Below are positions 1-63,288 of a DNA stretch of 64,000 nucleotides, in pieces; position 1 is the stretch's first letter; the number at the start of each line of letters is the position of its first letter. The notes beneath the pieces were generated by a model. It was not told where the DNA came from and made no database searches. It saw only the letters and a list, made by a program, of their open reading frames with translations. A program made the position numbers and the translations under genes. The DNA lies in the IMG/VR virus record IMGVR_UViG_3300028840_002431, positions 1 to 64,000 of that record; one strand, given 5' to 3'.

Positions 1-5705
<5,705 letters not shown>

Positions 5706-10735: not shown

Positions 10736-10742
10736 CTACACC
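10736..10742 (-). promoter_or_regulatory. GGTGTAG motif upstream of ung
   Basis: Start GTG begins 11 nt after the T of TA; no SD. Confidence 0.55.
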
Positions 10743-32940: not shown

Positions 32941-33087
32941 TCAGTCCGCTCGAACCAATGTGTAGGCGGTCCGGGACTCGTCAAGTTCCCGCTTATAGGT
33001 CTCTTCTAACTCCTTCTCGGCCGCTTCCATCGCCGCGAGTGCGTCACTCTCAGCCTCTATTATAGGGAGCGGCTCCTTCTCACACAC
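32941..33087 (-). CDS. Small acidic protein (48 aa), not in the ORF track
   Basis: GTG TGT GAG AAG...GAC TGA gives MCEKEPLPIIEAESDALAAMEAAEKELEETYKRELDESRTAYTLVRAD; start overlaps the upstream stop. Confidence 0.5.
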   Translation of the reverse strand: MCEKEPLPIIEAESDALAAMEAAEKELEETYKRELDESRTAYTLVRAD

Positions 33088-33721
33088 AGCGGTCCACGCC
33101 CCTATCACTCCACTGCGGTAGGCTCACGGCCCTGAGAATATTGAAATTCTTGGATGCGATTGAGGAGAATATCTTATGGTATGGTTGGAACTGGTCATCA
33201 CCCTCGGCCGCATCCTTAAGAACCTCAACGGCCTTGAAAAACCGATGGCGGACACGTCCTTGTGTTAACTTCAACTTGGACGCCACTTCTGATTGGCACG
33301 TTGTCTGCCACATCCCCACCAAAATATTGATGTCGATTTGCTCAAAGATCTCGGCAAGATCCTTCCGCATGTCCTCTTCCGTGACCGTAGGAATGGACAG
33401 CAAGAACTTGATGCGTTGAATCCCCCGGTCCAGCCGGTAACTGATAGCCGCCTGGGTTACATCGAAGATTTCGGCTATGTCGGCTTGGCGTTTCTTACAG
33501 ACGTAATAGAGATATATAAGATCTGCCTCGCGTTCTGGTATCCGGTCAAGAAGGGGCGCGACAATCGTTTCATAGTCATCAGTGGAGAACAACGCCTCCA
33601 TCTCAGCCTCTTCTTCTTCCCTCTCTAGTCTCTCTCTTTCGTCTATAGGTGTTGGATCAGGTGCTGCAAAACGGTTAGCTAACTCAGCGGGATCGACCGG
33701 AATAACATAGCCACTTGACAT
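33080..33721 (-). CDS. Sigma-70 region 4-like protein with two HTH units
   Basis: LDRIPEREADLIYLYY...QADIAEIFDVTQAAISYRL is a canonical r4 HTH; second unit QSEVASKLKLTQGRVRHRF; AAGGAG SD. Confidence 0.75.
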   Translation of the reverse strand: MSSGYVIPVDPAELANRFAAPDPTPIDERERLEREEEEAEMEALFSTDDYETIVAPLLDRIPEREADLIYLYYVCKKRQADIAEIFDVTQAAISYRLDRGIQRIKFLLSIPTVTEEDMRKDLAEIFEQIDINILVGMWQTTCQSEVASKLKLTQGRVRHRFFKAVEVLKDAAEGDDQFQPYHKIFSSIASKNFNILRAVSLPQWSDRGVDRCV

Positions 33722-33770: not shown

Positions 33771-35555
33771 CTAAGGTTGTTTTGGGAAGAACGCAGCTAG
33801 AATAGACTTAGGCTTTACCTCAATACCCTCTAGCTCGGCTTCTGCCCTACTCTGATCTGGATTCGATTCGATCTGTCTGAATGGTACGTCTTTCAGAGCT
33901 AACAAGTCAATGTTTTTAATAACCCGATCCTCGTTAGCACGCAATTTGGAAACCTGACTTTTTCCTAACCCGGCCAAATTAGATCCTAACAGGGCCTCGA
34001 CTGAACCATACAGTTTGATGAGTTTGGAGGCTGTCTTAGGACCAAAGCCGGGGACTCCGGGTATATTATCTGAGGTGTCTCCGCTCAACGCCCGTAGGTG
34101 GATCATACTCTCCGGAGCCACTCCATACTCCCTCTTGACGAGCGCCGGGTTGTATAACCTTTCCTTACCCATCCCCACCTTTGGGCACAACTGGTGAGTG
34201 AACTCCGATACCAACTGTAACAGATCCCTGTCCGTGGAAATCAGCACGTTTGGGCGGCCTTCGAGCGGCCCTCTCACCAGGGCGGCCATAACATCGTCAG
34301 CCTCTTCGTCTGGATTAAACGCCTGAATGACGCCGAATGACGGCAAATTATCTCGAAGCCAATCCATCTCGAAGGTGTTGGCCGCTGCCCCGGACCGCGA
34401 AATCCGGTTGGCCTTGTAGTCAGGGAACATAGCCTTCCGCCGTTGCGACGAACCATCCCAACACACGAAAACCCGCGCCTTCGGGAATCTCTTTTTGTAG
34501 GAGCCAAGGCTTCTTAGAAACCCAACGATGGCACCGGTCGGTCGGCCCTGAGAGTCCGTGAGGTCGCTCAAGCCGGGAGCGGAAAGACATCGAATGTATA
34601 ATTGGGTGCCGTCCACGACCAAATTCATAGGAGTAGGTTCTGTCATTTCTCTTACGTCCGAGTATATCGTAAAGATCTTGGCGCAAGCTTCTGATAGAAA
34701 CCGCACCTCCTGGTGTTTCTGAGACATGAAGCTTAGGTCCGGGAGAGGAGCGCTAACAGTATGAATCTGACTCCGTAAAGAAACCCCTGTCTGTAGGTTT
34801 CGTAGCTCCTGGAACTTGGCCCACAAGGGGTCAAAATCTATCCGGGAATGGTACGCTCTTATAAAATGGTACGTGGCCCGGCTCTTTTCGATCCAACCAT
34901 CCATACGACCGAGATTCCGATGGCCTTCCCGGACCCCTTCCAACTCGGAACCGGACCAGCGGGCTAACATAAGAGCACCCCGCGCCCACTCCGTTAGCTT
35001 TTCCAACTTCGTCCGGTGGACCACGTGAGGAGGTTTTGATTTCAACCTCAAGAACGCTCTGGGTAATGTTACCAACCGATCTGTGGATCTTAATTGAATG
35101 TGGACCGTCACCGAATCGTGCTCATGAATCTCCTCCCGCACGACAGCTTCGATGTTTTTGTAAGGGCCTGAGGTTATAACTACGATGTCGTCAACCTCTA
35201 TGCCCTGATCCACCTCAACCTTTATCTGCTTACGCAGTTGGTCTATCTGCTCCGGGGAGACAGTCGCCAGACGCTTGTCCTTCTTAACTCCGGTCGGAAC
35301 GTATAAAGGTCCCTGGACGTATTTCGTGTCTACCAGCCGGGCGTAGTGGGTCTCCGTGTGCCTGTGTTGAACGAAGGCGTACCCGTCCACAAGGTAATGG
35401 AAAACCCTCTGCTCCCCACGTTGAACCACTGACGCCGGTACGAAAACTTCGGCGTCCCGGATATGATGACGGATCGAATTCCGTACCATATCCGGATCTT
35501 CATTTTCTGCTTTAGAGGTAAGCTCTAATACTACCCACTGGTTTTCCGTACCCAT
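33771..35555 (-). CDS. NusG-like (NGN+KOW) domain fused to a Pol I-type 5'-3' exonuclease / flap endonuclease
   Basis: N-term WVVLEL...EVFVPA...DGYAFV and IEVDDIVVITSGPYKNIEAVV (KOW); C-term VVDG, VCWDG, YKANR, EEADDV, STDRDLLQL, GDTSDNIPGVPGFGPKTA. Confidence 0.85.
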   Translation of the reverse strand: MGTENQWVVLELTSKAENEDPDMVRNSIRHHIRDAEVFVPASVVQRGEQRVFHYLVDGYAFVQHRHTETHYARLVDTKYVQGPLYVPTGVKKDKRLATVSPEQIDQLRKQIKVEVDQGIEVDDIVVITSGPYKNIEAVVREEIHEHDSVTVHIQLRSTDRLVTLPRAFLRLKSKPPHVVHRTKLEKLTEWARGALMLARWSGSELEGVREGHRNLGRMDGWIEKSRATYHFIRAYHSRIDFDPLWAKFQELRNLQTGVSLRSQIHTVSAPLPDLSFMSQKHQEVRFLSEACAKIFTIYSDVREMTEPTPMNLVVDGTQLYIRCLSAPGLSDLTDSQGRPTGAIVGFLRSLGSYKKRFPKARVFVCWDGSSQRRKAMFPDYKANRISRSGAAANTFEMDWLRDNLPSFGVIQAFNPDEEADDVMAALVRGPLEGRPNVLISTDRDLLQLVSEFTHQLCPKVGMGKERLYNPALVKREYGVAPESMIHLRALSGDTSDNIPGVPGFGPKTASKLIKLYGSVEALLGSNLAGLGKSQVSKLRANEDRVIKNIDLLALKDVPFRQIESNPDQSRAEAELEGIEVKPKSILAAFFPKQP

Positions 35556-35581
35556 CCCACTTTTCGACTACACTGCGAAAA

Positions 35582-47383: not shown

Positions 47384-47541
47384 GGCTTTCCTCTTTTTTA
47401 GGGTCGCTCCAACCACAAATTATCAAGTAGGAGGTTAGAAACGACAGTTTCGTTAGCTGACAGACTTGAGGACCATCTCCAGAGGTATCTATATGAGCCT
47501 AATGGTATAGGGTTTCCAAGCCTGTCAGGAGCCTCTACACC
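47384..47541 (-). promoter_or_regulatory. GGTGTAG promoter motif plus structured leader of the SSB gene
   Basis: Motif at 47535-47541; 12-bp stem 47517-47528 / 47457-47468; small hairpin AACGA-AACTG-TCGTT. Confidence 0.55.
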
Positions 47542-48393: not shown

Positions 48394-48400
48394 CTACACC
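48394..48400 (-). promoter_or_regulatory. GGTGTAG motif upstream of the 47558-48385 gene
   Basis: ATG 11 nt after the T of TA. Confidence 0.55.
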
Positions 48401-48409
48401 ACCGATGAC

Positions 48410-49138
48410 TCACACTGGTGCTTTTATGGGCGTTGTTTGCAAACGAAAAAGAAGTTGATCCACGGACATATCGGCGTCGCGCCACTCTTTCACCGCCTGG
48501 ATAAGCTGTAGCCGGGTCGCGGTCTCGACTTGTTTGTCGCGTCTGCTCTTCTCACCCCCCACCGCGATTAGCTCCTTGGCGACGGGGGCACAAACCTCCA
48601 TTATCCGGCAGAATAAGGCTCCTTGTTCGATCGCGTCGTCCACGGCTTTGTGGGTATGTTTTGGTAAACCCTCGAACCACTCTTTCGGCATATTTCTTTT
48701 GCTCGTCTCTCGAAAGGGTTTCCGAAGAACGGCCATGGCCAGGGTCTTGATATCGAGAGCCTGAAAACCAAAAGGGCTTTTCCCCGTAAATTTGATCAGG
48801 TACCAATACACGAAAGTGAAATCGTACCCCGCCGGGTAACAAACACAAACAGGTTTTCCAGGCAAACGATTTAACCACTCGGTAAAACGTAGCATGACCG
48901 ATTGAGGGGCTACTGGGTTGCTTCTACACGCCTTCCAGGCTTCGGGTTGTGTTTCCCACCAAGCCATCGTTTCAGGGTTCCCGGACGCCCCCTCCAAGGT
49001 CTTCAAGTTGGCTGAAAAGGTGTCCACCAGAGTTTCATCCAACTGGTATGCAGCGGCTCCCAAGCTCAACATAGAGTTAGGACCCGGAATAGGCCCATCT
49101 GACTCCACGTCAACGCTTACATAAATTTCCCTAGCCAT
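48410..49138 (-). CDS. DEDDh 3'-5' exonuclease
   Basis: Start reassigned to ATG 49138; [24 protein letters not shown]. Confidence 0.85.
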
Positions 49139-51311
49139 TTTCACTCCCCACCAGATCACGAAAGATGGTGTTGCGTTGAACCACCTTGTCGTTCGCTACA
49201 GCCTTTAACACAGCGTCTGACTGTCCTAACAACCACACCTTATTCCTGGCCCGTGTTATTGCCGTATAGAACAGATTTCTTTGCAACATACGCCCCTGTC
49301 TCCGTACTAGGGGTAAGATTATGGTCTCGAACTCTTCTCCCTGGCAACGGTGTACCGTTACCGCGTACGCCAACTTGAGCATCAATCTAGCTTCGTCCTT
49401 GGGGACTTCAACGTTCGTGTCCGGAGTGTTCCCAACCCCATGGATTCGAAGGGTGAGACTATCCTTTTTGATAGCCACTAACTTGCCAATGTCTCCGTTA
49501 TAGACATTGAGTTCGTAGTTGTTCTTGATAACCATGAGCCGGTCGCCCACCCGTGTTTGAAACTCGGGGAGGCTCCACCGCGCCTGACCTTTGTCCGGGT
49601 TTAACTCGTCTCGCAAAAGATTGTTCAGATTGTTGACCCCGACAACGCCTTCGTACTTAGGAGACAACACCTGAAAATTGGCGTCGCGCCCCTTGAGCTT
49701 GGCGGCCATCTTAACGATAAGCCCCGCAATCTGGCGCTCCTCGGATATCTCCCGGAATTGGAACTCAGTTTGTTCCTTGACCGGAAGGTCTAAAGGCGTC
49801 TTTCCGGCTCTGATCCGGTGGGCAGCCTTTACAATGTCACTCGTCTCAGCTTGTCGGAACACGTGCTCCAACCTGACGTGGGAGACGGCCTCACACAACA
49901 GTAGTTCTCTCAACACATTTCCAGGTCCGACGGACGGAAGCTGTGCGTCGTCTCCGACCAGGACAATCATCGTCTCCGACTCCAAAGCGTCCAGGAGACG
50001 ATAAAACAAACCTTGGTCAACCATCGAGCATTCATCGACGATAATAGCTTGAGTCCGTAACGGTTCGTGCCTGTTGTGCCACCACTGGAAGCCGTCGTAT
50101 TTTAATGCCCGATGGATAGTTGAGGCGCTGTCTTCCGTCACAGCCGCCAGACGCTTTGCGGCGATCCCCGTGGGTGCCATAAGGTTGTAACTTACCCCCA
50201 ACTGTCTGAACAGATGGACAAAGGCACGGATCAACGTCGTCTTCCCCGTCCCCGGTGCCCCTGTCACAACCAACACCCTGTTTGCTATGAGCCTTTCTAT
50301 GGCTTCTCGCTGTCTGTCGGATAACGTTATACTGTTGACGGACTCATAGTTCCGAAGAAAGATTCCGACATCGATAACCAACTCAGACGGGGACAAGAAC
50401 TGTGTGAGTAACGACGCCCCCTCCCGCTCATAAAGATACATATCCGGCAAGTAGACACCCACACCAGGGTCCACCTTTACCTTCTCATCCCTTTCCAGTT
50501 CCTCTATAGCCTTGGTAACTTCGCGGGGGAGATCCGTAGCATCGAATGGCGCTACACCATTAGAGGCGGCTACGACGTTCATGAGTTCCGCGATATCACC
50601 ACGCCTCGCGAATAGGTGTCCCTGGTAAGTCTGTTCTCGAAGAGTCCAAAGAACACCACCCTTGATGCGCCTGGGGTCGCCAAGTTGAAAACCTCTTTTC
50701 ATGGCCAGAGTGTCAACTTGCCGGAAGGGGAAACCCTCGATCTCCATCAAGCGGTACGGATCGTCCCGGATGATATCTATCGAGTCTTCTCCAAACTTCA
50801 TGAATATCTGGGCCACCATCGTTGCCGACAGGCCGTGTTTGCGAAGGAACTCGGCCAGCGTGGCTTCACCGCGAATCCGCCGCCAACGGGTACACGCCAG
50901 TCTCAACACCTCCTCTTCTTCTTCGTCCGCGCTCAAATCATGCCCGTTCAACAGGGCATCATAGGTTTCGGTTCCAAACACCTGGACTGTTTTGCTCAGA
51001 ACCTTCCAGTTATCGAACACCTTGACACAATTACCCAAGAAGAAGCGGACCTCGTTTTCGTCTCTGGCCCAAGGTTGCCAACCCGACGCCTTGTATTGCA
51101 AGCCATACTTCTGGTGGATTTCCCATTCCCCTGAAATTTCCAGAACCGCTCCTTCGATCAACTTCTCGATACCGAAGAAGTACCCCGACACTTTGACATT
51201 ACGGGGACGACGCTCCTCGCCCTTGGCCTCCAAGACCTTAAAGGAGAAGGCGTGGTAGGGAGAGTCCCCGCCGAAGAACACCTTTTTGATACAGCCACGG
51301 TAGTATCCCAC
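49131..51311 (-). CDS. recD2: RecD2-like SF1B helicase
   Basis: DPYRL, HhH region, [49 protein letters not shown]. Confidence 0.93.
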
Positions 51312-51320
51312 CGGGCTTAT

Positions 51321-51327
51321 CTACACC
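51321..51327 (-). promoter_or_regulatory. GGTGTAG motif upstream of recD2
   Basis: GTG 12 nt after the T of TA; no SD. Confidence 0.55.
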
Positions 51328-51330
51328 AAC

Positions 51331-53247
51331 CTACCCTTCGAGGATAGCCAAAAACTCGGCCTCCGAGATGCATTTGGTGTTATTTTTACGCGCCGCCTGA
51401 GCTTTTGAGGTATTGGAGTTAGGATCGGCCATAACCAGATAGCTCAGTCTCTTGCCAACCGACTTCTTCACCTCTCCGCCAGCGTCCTTGACCATCTTCT
51501 CGAACGTGGGACGAGGCTTGCTCAACGCGCCAGTGAAACAGAAACTCTTACCGGTAAGGGTGCCCTGGATCTTCGCCTCGATCTCGACGCCAAGTGAAAG
51601 GAGTCTGTCAACGACCTCACTCTCCTCTTGGAGCCACGTGTGAAGAGCCTGAGCCTTCACCGGCCCCAACCCTTCGACACCCGACAACTGGCTCATGCTG
51701 GCCGCCTTGAGCTTGTCGAAGGTGTCGTACCCGGCGTCCATAGCCATCTTGATAGTGCTCGAAGCACACAGGGGGATAGACAGAGAGCCAAGAAGCGTCT
51801 CCAGCGGAACCTTCTTCTTGACCCAGAGGGTCTTGATGACCTTGGCAGCCGATTTCTTACCCATCCGCTCGACATTGGTTAACTGCATATCCGTCAGCCG
51901 GTAGAGATCGGACACGTCCTTGACCAGACCCGAAGAGACCAGTTTCTCGATAAGAGTCTCGCCCCACTCCTTGATGTCCATAGCCGCCACGTAACGTTTG
52001 ATCCGGCCGACCGACTGAGCGGGGCACCCGTCCGCGTTGGGGCAGATCAAATACTCCCCGGCCGCTTCCGTTAACGTACCACAAGCGGGACACTCGGAGG
52101 GTGGGTTGGCGATCGTACCCACTCCTTTCACCACCTCAGTAACACGTGGAATCACATCCTGAGCACGAGACACGATAATGGTTGCGCCCACGTCCAGGCC
52201 CAGCGACCGGATGTAGGCCACATTGTAAAGACTGGCGTTCGTGATCTCGGCCCCCAGAATGTTGACCGGCCGGAAGATGGCAACGGGCGTAATACGGCCG
52301 GTTCCCCCGACCTGCCACTCGATACGCTGAAGGACCGACTCCCTGGTCGTCGCCGCGAACTTGAAAGCGACCGCGCCTCTCGGACAGTTGTCTTTCTCTC
52401 CAAGAGCCAGTTGCGCGGCCATGTTATTGATGCGGACCACGAGACCGTCGATGTCGTAATCGAGTTCGTCTCGCTTGAACTGTTGATACTCCAACCACAG
52501 ATCCTGAGGCGTCCTTACGCCCGGCACCATGGCGGTCACGTACCAGTTGGGGGTATCGAAACCGTGGTCTTCGAGCCACTTGAACTGGTCGGCCTCAGTC
52601 TCGAAGTCCTGTCCGTCGGCCACCTGATAAAACTTGACGCTCAAGTGTTCGCAACCCTGGCCGTCGTAGCGTCTTGCAATACCGCTGGCGGCGTTTCTGG
52701 GGTTGGCCTTCTCCGGGAAATACTTGGCGTGGTAGCTTCTCTTCAAGATGATCTCACCACGCAACGTCCCCGTGAAGCTTCTGGGTAGTTTCCCCCTGAC
52801 ACCCTCCATCTTGGAGACGTTGACCGTGATATCCTCTCCGATGTTACCATCGCCACGAGTCGCCGCCTTGTCCAACTCGCCTTTGACGTAGTCCACGGCG
52901 ATCGAGATGCCGTCGAGCTTCTCCGAAGTCATCAACGGAGCGGTCTGGGACTCGCCAGTGCCCGAAAGCCAGGAGGTCAGTTCGTCGATGGTCTTGACGT
53001 TGTCCAGGGACCCCATGGGGATCGAGTGCTCGACCTTCTCCCATTCAGAGACCGGGGTAGCTCCAACGGCGGTTACGGCGTCGCTGTCGGGTTTGACTTC
53101 GGCTAACTCGGCTACCCAGGCGTCGTAAACATCGTCCGAGACTGTCGGAGTTCCATTGTAATAATCGTGCCGCGCCTTCTTGATCTTGGCCTCTAACTCG
53201 GAGGCACGTTCGGCGGACGGTTGAGAAATTAGATCAAAAAAGTCCAT
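51331..53247 (-). CDS. ligA: NAD-dependent DNA ligase
   Basis: Start reassigned to ATG 53247 (the 102-aa extension overlaps another gene); SEKLDG, IDGLVV, AVAFKF, CPACG...C...C zinc finger, BRCT (FCFTG...VGKRLSYLV). Confidence 0.95.
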   Translation of the reverse strand: MDFFDLISQPSAERASELEAKIKKARHDYYNGTPTVSDDVYDAWVAELAEVKPDSDAVTAVGATPVSEWEKVEHSIPMGSLDNVKTIDELTSWLSGTGESQTAPLMTSEKLDGISIAVDYVKGELDKAATRGDGNIGEDITVNVSKMEGVRGKLPRSFTGTLRGEIILKRSYHAKYFPEKANPRNAASGIARRYDGQGCEHLSVKFYQVADGQDFETEADQFKWLEDHGFDTPNWYVTAMVPGVRTPQDLWLEYQQFKRDELDYDIDGLVVRINNMAAQLALGEKDNCPRGAVAFKFAATTRESVLQRIEWQVGGTGRITPVAIFRPVNILGAEITNASLYNVAYIRSLGLDVGATIIVSRAQDVIPRVTEVVKGVGTIANPPSECPACGTLTEAAGEYLICPNADGCPAQSVGRIKRYVAAMDIKEWGETLIEKLVSSGLVKDVSDLYRLTDMQLTNVERMGKKSAAKVIKTLWVKKKVPLETLLGSLSIPLCASSTIKMAMDAGYDTFDKLKAASMSQLSGVEGLGPVKAQALHTWLQEESEVVDRLLSLGVEIEAKIQGTLTGKSFCFTGALSKPRPTFEKMVKDAGGEVKKSVGKRLSYLVMADPNSNTSKAQAARKNNTKCISEAEFLAILEG

Positions 53248-53254
53248 ACCGGTA

Positions 53255-53277
53255 CTACACCCATGCCCGGCTACACC
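53255..53277 (-). promoter_or_regulatory. Tandem GGTGTAG motifs upstream of ligA
   Basis: Copies at 53271-53277 and 53255-53261; ATG 10 nt after the proximal TA; no SD. Confidence 0.6.
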
Positions 53278-56822: not shown

Positions 56823-57767
56823 CTAAAAGGTTTCAACAAGAGTTGTCTTGAAATGGAAGGGGAGGTTTATCCGAGTTATCCGATACCGGCTCTGTAGATC
56901 TCTCGTTTTTTTGGTTAACTCGTTCCATGTTTGTAGAGAGGCTCTCTTCCCTATCTTCTCCAGATCATCAGAACGATCCGCATGAATAACTCGGGTAGTA
57001 TCTACACGGCCTACAAATATATCGTGGACGATTTGTTCCAGAAATTTCAGAGCTAGTAGCAAATCCTTGTCCATAGCATCCACGGCCGCAAACAACGTCG
57101 AAAGATCCTTGTCCAAGGCTGCCTGGAGAACAGCCACGACTTGATCTCGAAGGGCCAATCGACCCGAACCCCAGTAGCGGAGAGCGTTGCCTACCGAACC
57201 CTCTCCCATTCGCGTATAGACAAGAGCTTTAGCGCTCGTATCGTATTGCTGAACTACCGATAAAACGAACTCTTCGGGAAGCGGAAGGTATTGTACGCGC
57301 CCGCACCTCGAACGAATTGTAGGCAACACACGATCGATATCTTCAGCGATCAAGAAAAAACGTGACCGGGCTGGCGGCTCTTCAAGAGTCTTTAAAAAAG
57401 CGTTGGCGGCCGGTCCCGTGAACCGGTCCGCCCCGTCGATGACGAAGCATCGAACCGAAGCGACCGACGGATAGCTCTTGGCCTCACTGATCAATCGACG
57501 TATGTCGTCGATACCAATGTCTTTTTCGCTGGCGTCCAGCGTGAGGATATCCGGGTGGATGTTTTTCGTTATCTGGTAGCAAGACGAGCACGGACAGTCC
57601 GGTTCTCGATTCTCCTGGCAGAAAGCCTCTTGTGCGGCCTTGAGCACAGAAAACTTCCTACCAACCCCCGCAGGACCAACCAGCAAAATCGGTGACACCA
57701 GACGCCCTTCAACAAAGCGTCTAAGGAACTTCACCCCCTCCGTCTGGTGCTGAATCTCCTGTAGCAT
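56823..57767 (-). CDS. holB: DNA polymerase III delta' subunit
   Basis: GPAGVGRK, CPCSSC, HPDIL, IGIDDIR, AANAFLKTLEEPP, VLPTIRSRC; start probably ATG 57767. Confidence 0.9.
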   Translation of the reverse strand: MLQEIQHQTEGVKFLRRFVEGRLVSPILLVGPAGVGRKFSVLKAAQEAFCQENREPDCPCSSCYQITKNIHPDILTLDASEKDIGIDDIRRLISEAKSYPSVASVRCFVIDGADRFTGPAANAFLKTLEEPPARSRFFLIAEDIDRVLPTIRSRCGRVQYLPLPEEFVLSVVQQYDTSAKALVYTRMGEGSVGNALRYWGSGRLALRDQVVAVLQAALDKDLSTLFAAVDAMDKDLLLALKFLEQIVHDIFVGRVDTTRVIHADRSDDLEKIGKRASLQTWNELTKKTRDLQSRYRITRINLPFHFKTTLVETF

Positions 57768-57936
57768 TTCCTGGCCCAAGCAGATCTTTCGTACGCTCCA
57801 CAGGATCTACCGGGACAAATTGGAGCACCCCATGATAATGCTGACCGCAGTCCTGGCAGATGTATCTGTGGACCTCTACACCACTGGGTGCCAGACGGCC
57901 CTCGCACTTGAGGCACTTGATGAAGTCTTCTGTCAC
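57721..57936 (-). CDS. Small zinc-ribbon protein
   Basis: GTGA overlap start at 57936; CLKC...CQDC. Confidence 0.55.
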   Translation of the reverse strand: MTEDFIKCLKCEGRLAPSGVEVHRYICQDCGQHYHGVLQFVPVDPVERTKDLLGPGNATGDSAPDGGGEVP

Positions 57937-60807: not shown

Positions 60808-60824
60808 CTTTTCTCCGTTACACC

Positions 60825-60859
60825 AAAAAATAAGGGAGATGGTCTGAGACCATCTCCCT
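60825..60859 (-). terminator. Intrinsic terminator after the vWA gene
   Basis: Perfect 12-bp stem AGGGAGATGGTC-TCA-GACCATCTCCCT then TATTTTTT. Confidence 0.85.
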
Positions 60860-60929
60860 CGAATTGACTCATGCTATCAGTTCAGCCAGCGCCTACGACT
60901 CTAACGCCCTGGCCTCTTAATGGCAACAG

Positions 60930-62510: not shown

Positions 62511-62694
62511 GGCTTTGGTCCTCCCGTAGCCGTCTGGCCTAGCAACTTCCCCTGGTGCGGGCCTGGACTGACCCCAAAACCAAAGGACCGCTAAGCGGTC
62601 ACAGAACGTCCACCGCCTTTCCAAACCTCGGATTTTCCTTAGGCGCGATCAGCGGCACGAGAGACCCAACCCGGAGGCGCGGCCTCACGCTTAC

Positions 62695-62745
62695 CATGAT
62701 ATACACCGGAAAAGGGAAGTCAAGTTCTTATTTGTGCCGGTGTAA
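62695..62745. promoter_or_regulatory. Divergent promoter region with inverted TACACCGG/CCGGTGTA repeats
   Basis: GGTGTA on minus (62702-62707) and plus (62739-62744); minus strand also reads TTGACT-N16-TATCAT. Confidence 0.55.
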
Positions 62746-62753
62746 GATCCAAG

Positions 62754-63065
62754 ATGAGCCTCCCGGATAAATTCTTCGCTGGGTTCCCGGATGAAACTCA
62801 GGCTTCAAGATCCACGGTCCTCGACTACATCTACGACACCTTGGACGATTGGATGTTGGAAGGGAACGGGACCGCCGTTGACGAGGTGCTCGACCGAGTA
62901 GATGTGGACTCTTGCGAACTCGTGTACCTGATCGGGTACCTCACGATCACGGGACAATGGAAACATAAGCTGACCAAACGGGACGAGTTCTACAACCGGG
63001 TAAGGAGCAGAGTCTTGCAGGAGGAACCAGAACGAGTCATTCCCCTCCTGCAAGGACTACGCTAA
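62754..63065 (+). CDS. Hypothetical protein (only plus-strand gene)
   Basis: 103-aa ORF in otherwise non-coding space; GGTGTAA motif 11 nt before ATG. Confidence 0.7.
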   Translation: MSLPDKFFAGFPDETQASRSTVLDYIYDTLDDWMLEGNGTAVDEVLDRVDVDSCELVYLIGYLTITGQWKHKLTKRDEFYNRVRSRVLQEEPERVIPLLQGLR

Positions 63066-63220
63066 TCCGACAGTTGAGCCTGAATCTCGGCCTTAGCTCG
63101 ACGACGAACCCGCGTTTCGATAGCCTTTTCAGCGGCGTTCGGAGCACGCTTCGGGGCATGACCATGACGGACAACCCAAGACTTGCGCCCACCCGCCTTA
63201 CGATATGATCCGTTCCTCAT
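63062..63220 (-). CDS. Small basic protein (52 aa)
   Basis: MRNGSYRKAGGRKSWVVRHGHAPKRAPNAAEKAIETRVRRRAKAEIQAQLSD; start placed after the terminator rather than at 63358. Confidence 0.5.
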   Translation of the reverse strand: MRNGSYRKAGGRKSWVVRHGHAPKRAPNAAEKAIETRVRRRAKAEIQAQLSD

Positions 63221-63250
63221 GTTTGGTCTACCGCTGGGGTCCCAAAAACC

Positions 63251-63288
63251 TAAATAAAACGCCCACGAACCTAAGCTCGTGGGCGTTT
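63251..63288 (-). terminator. Intrinsic terminator after the HNH gene
   Basis: AAACGCCCACGAGC-TTAG-GTTCGTGGGCGTTT then TATTT. Confidence 0.85.

What the first reader, a model, noticed from the sequence alone, without database searches (positions are those of the whole stretch)
48394..53277. GGTGTA(G/A) element at fixed distance from SD-less start codons: phage promoter making leaderless mRNAs
Seen: the start codon begins 10-12 nt after the T of TA for ligA (10), ung (11), the 48385 gene (11), the plus-strand 62754 gene (11) and recD2 (12), and for a GCGGTAGA variant before 63220 (10). None of these has a convincing SD, while most other genes do. Further copies precede the SSB leader (47535), the vWA leader (62702), the 60807 gene (60818, right after a terminator) and NusG-FEN (AGTGTAG, 35568). 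About 30 chance GGTGTA hits are expected in 128 kb from base composition, so the signal is the positional clustering in very short spacers. Known: a -10 element ~11-12 nt before the start codon is the hallmark of leaderless transcripts. Inference: a -35-independent early/middle promoter class with an unusual GGTG extension directly abutting TA, read by a phage factor or an alternative host sigma.
Basis: partly seen in the sequence, partly recalled or inferred. Interest (0 to 1): 0.8.

Follow-up and report, generated by a model that had tools for sequence, protein, structure and literature searches.

The report
Conserved GGTGTAR promoter-like element before start codons
A seven-base signal, GGTGTA(G/A), sits 11-12 bases in front of the start codons of a set of replication and repair genes in this ~416-kb phage and is kept there across its relatives, so it is most likely a compact promoter that makes mRNAs beginning at the start codon.

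Summary
GGTGTA occurs no more often than chance in the window (23 vs 21 expected). However, it is the top-ranked of all 6-mers for sitting at a fixed distance before ORF starts, both in the window and in relatives.

The window is the first 64 kb of a 416-kb uncultured phage. In 21 distinct relatives (47-67% protein identity), the six motif bases before one gene are 100% identical, while flanking bases are at random identity (~0.25). The element is also kept before ligA, ung and a fourth gene. In two relatives it is replaced by a GGAG ribosome-binding site.

A distant 485-kb phage (LR745208.1) independently gives GGTGTAA as its top 7-mer at the same distance (consensus GGnGTAR).

Three contexts point to a promoter. 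Copies directly follow the two strong terminators. One lies in the strand-switch region. One lies 11-12 nt before the first base of a covarying 5' stem in the SSB leader.

The element has no -35 and no T at hexamer position 6, so it is not a sigma-70 -10 element. The factor that reads it is unknown, and no transcript 5' ends were available.

Verdict: a new variant of a known kind, namely a leaderless-mRNA promoter.

The parts
53255..53261 (-). GGTGTAG, proximal copy before ligA (ATG 53247-53245). T at 53257, distance 10.
   Evidence: ligA orthologues in about 14 relatives carry GGTGTA[GA] at T+11/12.
53271..53277 (-). GGTGTAG, distal copy 16 nt upstream of the first. Its first G is the last base of the TAG stop (53279-53277) of the conserved 81-aa gene.
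   Evidence: The 81-aa ORF is conserved at 59-76% identity in relatives.
51321..51327 (-). GGTGTAG 3 nt after the ligA stop and 12 nt (T to G) before the recD2 GTG at 51311.
   Evidence: Present before recD2 in only some relatives (L026, L028, L033) and absent in L004, L005, L009, L012.
48394..48400 (-). GGTGTAG 9 nt after the stop of the exonuclease gene and 11 nt before ATG 48385 of a 275-aa phage-specific gene.
   Evidence: Across 21 distinct relatives the six motif columns are 100% identical, while flanks are about 0.25 identical.
47535..47541 (-). GGTGTAG before the ~150-nt SSB leader. No start codon follows at the usual distance.
   Evidence: Conserved in L004, L005, L009 (and as GGTGTAC in L010). 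The first base of a covarying stem lies at T+11/12.
47384..47530 (-). Structured SSB 5' leader. Its 5' stem (GACAGGCTTGG pairing with CCAAGTCTGTC) starts at the predicted transcription start.
   Evidence: RNAalifold gives 24 pairs, 14 of them with compensatory changes. No Rfam family matches.
10736..10742 (-). GGTGTAG 3 nt after the upstream stop and 11 nt before the GTG (10727) of a uracil-DNA glycosylase gene.
   Evidence: Kept at T+12 in L061, L063 and L064 (as GGTGTAC). Replaced by GGAG in L062.
60818..60824 (-). GGTGTAA directly abutting the T-run of a 13-bp-stem terminator (60832-60860), 13 nt before ATG 60807. This is the first gene of the unit that continues into GroEL.
   Evidence: The same hairpin, T-run, motif, ATG (T+13) arrangement is seen in L004.
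62739..62745 (+). GGTGTAA 11 nt before ATG 62754, in the only strand-switch intergenic region (62625-62753).
62701..62707 (-). GGTGTAT facing the vWA gene. It overlaps a sigma-70-like promoter (TTGACT, 16 nt, TATCAT; 62723-62696) whose -10 hexamer starts 2 nt after the motif's TA.
63228..63234 (-). GCGGTAG variant, 22 nt after a 14-bp-stem terminator (63257-63288) and 10 nt before ATG 63220 of a 52-codon basic ORF.
35562..35568 (-). AGTGTAG 15 nt before the ATG of the NusG-FEN gene. A weak, unverified variant.
   Evidence: No orthologous comparison was available.

Best explanation
GGTGTAR (GGnGTAR across the wider clade) is a compact, -35-less promoter element.

Proposed mechanism:
- RNA polymerase, directed by a specificity factor that is not the host primary sigma, opens DNA at the GTA core.
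- It starts at the purine 11-12 nt downstream of the T.
- In most copies that purine is the A or G of the start codon. The mRNA then has no leader (or 1-2 nt) and no Shine-Dalgarno, and is translated by the leaderless route.
- In the SSB copy the same start point is the first base of a structured leader.

The element marks a class of non-structural genes: ligase, RecD2, UDG, the GroEL unit and SSB here; clamp loader, NAD synthase, RtcB and a methylase in LR745208.1.

Shown: the motif, its spacing, its conservation and its contexts.
Inferred: that it acts on DNA as a promoter, that transcription starts at the start codon, and the nature of the reading factor.
For: 1. Positional enrichment. GGTGTA is the top 6-mer before starts in the window and in 16 relative loci (31 of 148 copies, p = 4e-43). 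Distances T to start are 11 (16 cases) and 12 (13 cases), with few others.

2. Purifying selection on the element alone. Before the 275-aa gene in 21 distinct phages, pairwise identity is 1.00 in the six motif columns and 0.22-0.29 in the flanks and most spacer columns, rising to 0.43-0.50 in the last two columns shown. The element is also kept before ligA (about 14 genomes), ung (4 of 5) and the 126-aa gene.

3. Independent genome. In LR745208.1 (485 kb; terminase 48% identical), GGTGTAA is the top 7-mer at T+10..12 (12 of 58 copies, p = 5e-16). 29 of 572 genes carry GnGTAR, against about 4 expected by my own composition estimate. 25 of those 29 start with ATG, versus 55% overall.

4. Promoter contexts.
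- The motif follows each of the two long-stem (13-14 bp) terminators on the gene strand within 8-22 nt, and the same holds in L004.
- One copy precedes the plus-strand gene in the strand-switch region, and a GGTGTAT copy faces the vWA gene there.
- In the SSB leader, the spacer varies in sequence in five phages, but the covarying stem starts at T+11/12, the same distance as the start codons.

5. Alternation with an SD. L040 and L062 lack the motif and have GGAG 4-7 nt before the ATG. 0 of 36 motif-preceded starts in relatives have an SD core.

6. Start-site features. The predicted -1/+1 positions are pyrimidine/purine in 13 of 19 T+11 cases, with a G+C-rich stretch between motif and start.

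7. Precedent. A -10 motif next to the ORF producing leaderless mRNA is an established expression mode (PMC12340547), and phage transcripts are often leaderless (PMC5312081).
Against: - No RNA 5'-end data exist for these uncultured phages.
- There is no T at hexamer position 6 and no -35, so the known sigma-70 recognition logic does not apply.
- No candidate reader was found. There is no sigma-2-like, gp55-like, T7-like or beta/beta'-like protein in the window or in LR745208.1 by single-sequence phmmer. That search is weak and misses divergent proteins.
- Internal sense and antisense copies in LR745208.1 are not depleted relative to Markov expectation. Either seven bases alone are not sufficient, or spurious starts are tolerated.
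- recD2 orthologues often lack the element.
- No motif sits at a fixed distance before tRNA genes in LR745208.1.
Confidence: 0.6

Rival explanations
1. RNA-level translation signal. GGUGUAR in a polycistronic mRNA acts as a non-canonical ribosome-binding element. It would work either by GGUG pairing with the CACC part of the 16S 3' tail, or through a phage-encoded or ribosomal protein, and would position the 30S subunit on a start codon 11-12 nt downstream.
For: - The spacing is fixed relative to start codons.
- The element alternates with GGAG in two relatives.
- Internal copies are not depleted, as expected if a copy matters only when a start codon follows.
- GGUG can pair with the anti-SD, and the duplex energies reflect this.
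Against: - The spacer from GGUG to the start is 11-12 nt. SD-bearing genes in the same window use about 5-9 nt from GGAG/GAGG. A GGUG duplex would need an even shorter spacer (established SD geometry, own knowledge).
- The invariant TA and the R are unexplained by pairing. Only 4 of 7 bases can pair.
- In LR745208.1 the third base is any of T, C, A or G.
- The SSB copy is followed by a structured leader, not by a conserved ORF.
- The copies sit immediately after terminators.
Confidence: 0.14
2. ops-like loading or pause site. The element is read in the non-template strand of an elongating polymerase by the phage NusG-like protein (N-terminus of the NusG-FEN fusion). That protein then helps ribosomes engage SD-less start codons, as RfaH does through S10.
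For: - The ops sequence is GGCGGTAGCGTG, with G5 and T6 read base-specifically. RfaH targets lack an SD (PMC5995543).
- The motif shares G, GTA and G with ops positions 2-8. The variant at 63228-63234 (GCGGTAG) equals ops 2-8 exactly.
- The window encodes a NusG/LoaP/UpxY-like domain.
Against: - The C3:G8 pair needed for the ops hairpin cannot form. The corresponding positions here are G and G/A.
- There is no conserved T-G pause signal 5-6 nt downstream.
- ops sites are not at a fixed distance from start codons and occur once per operon.
- Copies immediately downstream of terminators, and the stem starting at T+11/12, are not predicted by this model.
Confidence: 0.08
3. Binding site of a phage regulator on double-stranded DNA. 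This could be a repressor in the manner of mycobacteriophage L5 'stoperators', or an activator, for example the tandem sigma-4-like protein. In this reading the element is not itself the -10-type element.
For: - The site is short, asymmetric and orientation-specific, and lies in short intergenic spacers, as stoperators do (own knowledge).
- A conserved protein with two sigma-4-type HTH domains is encoded in the window and in LR745208.1.
Against: - Spacing to the start codon, or to the leader stem, is held to +/-1 nt across about 25 genomes. A binding site alone does not require this.
- No second promoter-like signal is conserved next to it.
Confidence: 0.08
4. RNA processing site. An endonuclease cuts polycistronic RNA at or near GGUGUAR, producing monocistronic messages with very short leaders.
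For: The location just after the upstream stop codons.
Against: - A cut at the motif would leave a leader of roughly 8-12 nt with no SD, which gives no obvious benefit.
- The copies after terminators and in the divergent region need a promoter in any case.
- No hairpin is conserved around the motif: mean MFE is -5.8 vs -5.5 +/- 0.3 in permutations.
Confidence: 0.04

Closest known systems
The '-10 motif adjacent to the ORF' leaderless expression mode of Deinococcus-Thermus (PMC12340547). Also the -35-less middle/late promoters of Thermus phage phiYS40 that give leaderless mRNAs (Sevostyanova et al. 2007; recalled from memory, the paper could not be opened).
   Same: A short promoter element at a fixed distance of about 11-12 nt before SD-less start codons. 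ATG/GTG starts. SD-bearing and leaderless genes coexist in one genome.
   Different: Those elements are TANNNT, read by the primary sigma. Here the conserved bases are GG-n-GTA-R, with no T at position 6, and four of the conserved bases lie upstream of the TA.
-10 elements of ECF (group 4) sigma factors: 'CGT', CGTA for sigma-W, CGTC for sigma-M/X (PMC5758882).
   Same: A GTA/GTC core about 10-12 nt before the start site rather than TAnnnT. The GCGTAA variants in LR745208.1 contain CGTA.
   Different: ECF promoters depend on an 'AAC' -35 element at 14-17 bp, and none is conserved here. The base before GTA is mostly T here. No protein with a sigma-2 domain was found.
Late promoters of jumbo phages read by phage multisubunit RNA polymerases: AR9 AACA-(6N)-T(A/G), phiKZ TATG (PMC5312081).
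   Same: A very short motif about 10 nt upstream of a purine start, no -35, many copies including intragenic ones that are tolerated.
   Different: A different sequence. AR9 5' UTRs are 26-491 nt, not leaderless. No split beta/beta' genes were detected here, though the search was weak.
The RfaH ops element GGCGGTAGCGTG (PMC5995543).
   Same: Sequence resemblance (G..GTAG). Association with genes lacking an SD. A NusG paralogue is encoded nearby.
   Different: No hairpin-forming pair, no pause signal, a fixed distance to start codons, and many copies per gene array.
T4 late promoters (TATAAATA, read by gp55 with gp33 and the sliding clamp; own knowledge).
   Same: A single -10-region element with no -35 defines a temporal class. 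A phage factor is presumed.
   Different: A different sequence. T4 late mRNAs have leaders with an SD. No gp55 homologue was found.

Membership tests
Sigma-70-type (primary sigma) -10 / extended -10 promoter | T-12 and A-11 conserved | tested here: met
   TA is invariant in all copies.
Sigma-70-type (primary sigma) -10 / extended -10 promoter | T at hexamer position 6 (-7) | tested here: not met
   At T+5 the counts are A4 C7 G10 T2 in 23 copies, A19 C16 G21 T22 in LR745208.1, and A7 C4 G4 T4 in the T+11 class.
Sigma-70-type (primary sigma) -10 / extended -10 promoter | -35 hexamer 16-18 bp upstream, or TG one base before the hexamer | tested here: not met
   No conserved upstream column or positional k-mer. 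The TG abuts the TA with no intervening base. The only exception is the 62701-62707 copy, which overlaps a separate TTGACT-16-TATCAT promoter.
Leaderless-mRNA promoter (-10 motif adjacent to the ORF) | Promoter-like motif at a fixed short distance before the start codon | tested here: met
   In relatives, T to start is 11 in 16 cases and 12 in 13 cases, with a range of 9-14. In LR745208.1 the peak is at 10-11.
Leaderless-mRNA promoter (-10 motif adjacent to the ORF) | No Shine-Dalgarno between motif and start; ATG/GTG start | tested here: met
   0 of 36 in relatives and 1 of 7 in the window have an SD core. ATG is used in 32 of 36 and in 25 of 29.
Leaderless-mRNA promoter (-10 motif adjacent to the ORF) | Primary transcript 5' end at the start codon | not testable with these tools
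   No transcript data are available. Indirect support: the covarying SSB leader stem begins at T+11/12.
ECF sigma promoter | -10 'CGT(A/C)' element | tested here: inconclusive
   The GTA core is invariant. The preceding base is T in the window lineage, and T 27, G 22, A 15, C 14 in LR745208.1.
ECF sigma promoter | 'AAC' -35 element 14-17 bp upstream, and a sigma-2 + sigma-4 protein | tested here: not met
   There is no AAC enrichment. Only sigma-4-like domains are found in 33080-33721 and in its two LR745208.1 homologues.
RfaH ops element | G5-T6 loop closed by the C3:G8 pair, and a T11-G12 pause | tested here: not met
   GT is present, but the positions equivalent to C3 and G8 are G and G/A. 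No conserved TG lies at T+5/6 (definition from PMC5995543).
Shine-Dalgarno sequence | At least 4-5 nt complementary to the 16S 3' tail, 5-9 nt before the start | tested here: not met
   Only GGUG can pair, and the spacer is 11-12 nt. The 16S tail sequence was taken from general knowledge because the host is unknown.
T4-type late promoter / gp55 system | TATAAATA element and a gp55 homologue | tested here: not met
   The sequence differs. phmmer with T4 gp55 found nothing at E <= 10 in the window or in LR745208.1.

The most novel reading that the evidence does not exclude
GGnGTAR is read, probably in the melted non-template strand, by a phage-encoded specificity factor with no detectable similarity to sigma-2, gp55 or known phage polymerases. 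The NusG-like domain of the NusG-FEN fusion or the tandem sigma-4 protein could be part of this system. It would define a dedicated leaderless regulon, conserved across a clade of 400-485-kb phages, that bypasses the host's promoter and Shine-Dalgarno logic together.
Probability: 0.2. Interest if true: 0.8.

Novelty: new variant of a known kind. Interest (0 to 1): 0.6.

Why it matters
Huge phages known only from metagenomes have almost no experimentally grounded regulatory annotation. This work supplies a sharply defined seven-base signal, conserved across a whole clade, with a testable start-site prediction (+1 at T+11/12).

It has three practical uses:
- It corrects start-codon calls. It picks ATG 53247 for ligA, and the second ATG in L033.
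- It defines a co-regulated set of replication, repair and metabolic genes.
- It shows that these phages run two translation-initiation modes side by side.

Because the element breaks the TAnnnT rule, finding its reader could reveal a new promoter-specificity factor.

Tried and rejected
1. Hairpin with the motif in the loop (N4-like promoter or RNA operator). Several G+C-rich copies fold well. However, re-pairing upstream and spacer halves at random gives the same mean energy: -5.8 vs -5.5 +/- 0.3, with 32 of 200 permutations at least as low. The motif also sits at different places in the folds. Rejected.

2. Motif TAR as the stop codon of the upstream gene (termination-reinitiation). The real stops lie 3-9 nt upstream, and TAR is in no consistent frame. 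Rejected.

3. SD strength by duplex energy. The result is confounded because the GGTG of the motif itself pairs with the anti-SD. Replaced by counting SD cores.

4. Terminator association in LR745208.1. My strict finder saw only 2 terminators in 543 upstream regions, so this was uninformative.

5. Motif before tRNA genes in LR745208.1, which would have proved a transcriptional role. No fixed-distance association was found.

6. Depletion of internal copies. None was found.

7. A -35 element. There is a weak ATT/TTCC signal about 31 nt upstream in 8 of 29 LR745208.1 copies, which is not significant after multiple testing.

8. The reader of the motif. phmmer with E. coli RpoB, RpoC, RpoD and RpoE, T4 gp55 and T7 RNAP found nothing.

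9. Host inference from GroEL. The only hit was a 41% match to a Paceibacterota MAG, which is uninformative.

10. DNA-level search of cultured phages. No match.

11. Other checks. The phiYS40 paper is not held. A literature search for the motif gave nothing relevant. The internal conserved copy at 57877 is coding (S-G-V-E-V of a small zinc-ribbon protein).

Full report
**What the window is.** The window is the first ~64 kb of IMGVR_UViG_3300028840_002431, a 416,539-bp uncultured phage contig.
- Nearly all genes lie on the minus strand from 5.7 to 62.6 kb.
- The region 33-62 kb is a replication and repair module. It holds clamp-loader subunits, RecA, SbcCD-like and PD-(D/E)XK nucleases, SSB, a 3'-5' exonuclease, RecD2, NAD-dependent LigA, an RNR-like protein, GroEL, a vWA protein, a NusG-like domain fused to a flap endonuclease, and a protein with two sigma-4-like domains.
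- 5.7-33 kb looks structural, with a weak terminase hit.
- There is no DNA-level match among cultured phages.

**Checking the observation.** GGTGTA occurs 23 times on both strands, against 21.2 +/- 4.6 in shuffles, so abundance is not the signal. From the T of TA to the first base of the start codon:
- 11 nt for ung (10727), the 275-aa gene (48385) and the plus-strand gene (62754)
- 12 nt for recD2 (51311)
- 10 nt for ligA (53247) and for the GCGGTAG variant before 63220
- 13 nt for the 126-aa gene (60807)
- 15 nt for AGTGTAG before NusG-FEN

I tested position without using the motif to choose starts.
- Starts were picked only by ORF length and non-overlap with the upstream gene. GGTGTA was then the most enriched of all 6-mers in the 24 nt before genes: 6 vs 0.35 expected, p = 2e-6.
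- In a scan of all 6-mers against every start codon near an ORF 5' boundary, it is the only 6-mer with at least 4 hits at one distance: 5 of 23, p = 3e-8.

The start codons are supported by domain boundaries and by orthologue N-termini that align from residue 1.

The statement that 'most other genes have an SD' is too strong. 21 of 54 other genes have a GGAG/GAGG/AGGA core at -16..-5, against 1 of 7 motif genes.

**Comparative evidence.** Relatives at 47-67% protein identity were fetched from IMG/VR and JGI metagenomes.
- Before the 275-aa gene, 21 distinct phages all carry GGTGTA. Pairwise identity is 1.00 in those six columns, 0.55 at the next base (G > A > T), 0.50 at the base before (T/C), and 0.22-0.29 everywhere else, including most of the spacer to the ATG.
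- The same element precedes ligA in about 14 genomes, ung in 4 of 5, and the 126-aa gene in L004.
- In 16 relative loci an unbiased 6-mer scan again puts GGTGTA first: 31 of 148 copies at one 3-nt distance window, p = 4e-43. These copies are not phylogenetically independent.
- The distances are 11 nt (16 cases) and 12 nt (13 cases), with a few at 9-10 or 13-14. 32 of 36 starts are ATG, and none has an SD core.
- Where the element is missing, a GGAG sits 4-7 nt before the ATG instead: L040 for the 275-aa gene and L062 for ung.
- recD2 carries the element only in some lineages.

**An independent genome.** LR745208.1 is a 485-kb uncultured phage. Its terminase is 48% identical to the window's, and its homologue of the 275-aa protein is 28% identical. 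I read it completely.
- Without any prior, GGTGTAA is its top 7-mer before ORF starts: 12 of 58 copies at T+10..12, p = 5e-16. GTGTAA, GCGTAA and GAGTAA are among the top 6-mers, alongside the SD-type AGGAGA.
- Anchoring on GTA[AG] gives the consensus GG-n-GTA-A, often with an A-tract upstream.
- 29 of 572 called genes carry it, against about 4 expected from base composition (my own estimate). 25 of the 29 start with ATG, versus 55% of all calls.
- Those tested are enzymes, not structural proteins: a clamp loader with an intein, NAD synthase, RtcB, a methylase, a cytidylyltransferase-like protein and an ATP-grasp protein.

**What kind of element it is.** It is not a primary-sigma -10 element.
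- The base at hexamer position 6 is not T in any data set.
- The TG abuts the TA rather than being separated by one base.
- No -35 or other upstream column is conserved.

Several contexts argue that it acts on DNA as a promoter.
- The two strong intrinsic terminators on the gene strand between 46 and 64 kb (60860-60832 and 63288-63257) are each followed within 8-22 nt by the element and then a start codon. The hairpin, T-run, motif, ATG arrangement is kept in L004.
- The only strand-switch region (62625-62753) holds one copy directly before the plus-strand gene and a GGTGTAT copy facing the vWA gene.
- The copy at 47535-47541 is followed by a ~150-nt SSB leader, not by a start codon. In five phages the 9-10-nt spacer differs in sequence. 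In each, the first base of a stem with compensatory changes (GACAGGCTTGG paired with CCAAGyCTGTC and its covariants) lies at T+11 or T+12.

That is the same distance as the start codons elsewhere, and it is what a common transcription start predicts. The predicted -1/+1 positions are mostly pyrimidine/purine, and the stretch between the element and +1 is G+C-rich.

**Rivals.**
- *Ribosome-binding element.* This reading is weakened by the 11-12-nt spacer (SD genes here use about 5-9 nt), by the invariant TA that cannot pair with the 16S tail, by the free third base in LR745208.1, and by the SSB and post-terminator copies. In its favour, internal copies are not depleted.
- *ops-like site for the phage NusG paralogue.* The sequences resemble each other (ops is GGCGGTAGCGTG; the 63228-63234 variant equals ops 2-8), and RfaH targets lack an SD (PMC5995543). 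However, the hairpin-closing pair and the pause signal are absent, and ops sites are not at fixed distances from start codons.
- *Regulator binding site (stoperator-like) or RNA processing site.* Neither explains the +/-1-nt spacing.
- *Hairpin model and termination-reinitiation model.* Both were tested and rejected.

**Who reads it.** This is unresolved.
- The sigma-r4 protein (33080-33721) consists of two sigma-4-like domains and has no sigma-2. It has two homologues in LR745208.1, also without a recognisable sigma-2.
- Single-sequence searches with E. coli beta, beta', sigma-70 and sigma-E, T4 gp55 and T7 RNA polymerase found nothing in the window or in LR745208.1. This is weak negative evidence.
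- The presence of NusG-like and sigma-4-like proteins suggests the phage works through a bacterial-type polymerase.
- The GTA core about 11 nt before +1 resembles ECF -10 elements (CGTA/CGTC, PMC5758882), but the obligatory AAC -35 is missing.
- In style it also resembles jumbo-phage late promoters, which are a short motif about 10 nt before a purine start (PMC5312081).

**Verdict.** The most likely function is a compact, -35-less promoter that yields leaderless or near-leaderless mRNAs for a class of non-structural genes (confidence 0.6). Its consensus departs from the TAnnnT rule. It is a new variant of a known kind, and proof needs transcript 5'-end mapping.

Noticed in passing
window 47384-47530 (minus strand): The SSB gene has a ~150-nt conserved leader with two stems supported by compensatory changes in five phages. 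No Rfam family matches. It could be an autoregulatory operator of the kind known for T4 gene 32 (own knowledge).
   Followed up: partly
window 3-5705 (minus strand): A single open frame of at least 1901 codons encodes a collagen-like Gly-X-Y repeat protein (GPTGPTGAT...) and runs off the left end of the window. All the long plus-strand ORFs between 586 and 5688 are shadows of it.
   Followed up: partly
window 33771-35555 (minus strand): An unusual fusion. A NusG/LoaP/UpxY-like NGN-KOW region (about residues 7-165) is joined to a Pol I-type 5'-3' flap exonuclease (residues 312-556).
   Followed up: partly
window 33080-33721 (minus strand); LR745208.1 153886-154695 and 419691-420284: A protein made of two tandem sigma-70 region-4-like HTH domains with no region 2. 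It is conserved in the distant relative, in two copies.
   Followed up: partly
window ~57731-57916 (minus strand): A small conserved zinc-ribbon ORF (CxxC...CxxC) overlaps the start of the clamp-loader delta' gene by about 50 nt in another frame. The true delta' start is probably the ATG near 57767 (MLQEIQHQTEGVKF), not TTG 57779. The GGTGTAG at 57877 inside it is coding.
   Followed up: partly
L005, L010, L012, L020, L023, L026, L034, L036-L038, upstream of the 275-aa gene: A second semi-conserved box, TTGAAGGACTATC, lies 10-24 nt upstream of the motif at variable spacing. It is absent from the window. It may be the end of the upstream gene or another signal.
   Followed up: no
LR745208.1 (L042 7629-7705; L044-L046): This relative carries about 36 tRNA genes, including one with anticodon TTA (a TAA suppressor). 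It also has an intein in its clamp-loader gene and a LAGLIDADG insert in a methylase gene.
   Followed up: no
window 62696-62723 (minus strand): A good sigma-70-type promoter (TTGACT, 16 nt, TATCAT; 10 of 12 matches) overlaps the GGTGTAT copy facing the vWA gene. This suggests two promoter classes may be stacked at that site.
   Followed up: no
window 63062-63220 (minus strand): An unannotated 52-codon, very basic ORF (MRNGSYRKAGGRK...) lies between a terminator and the convergent end of the 62754 gene. It is preceded by the GCGGTAG variant.
   Followed up: no
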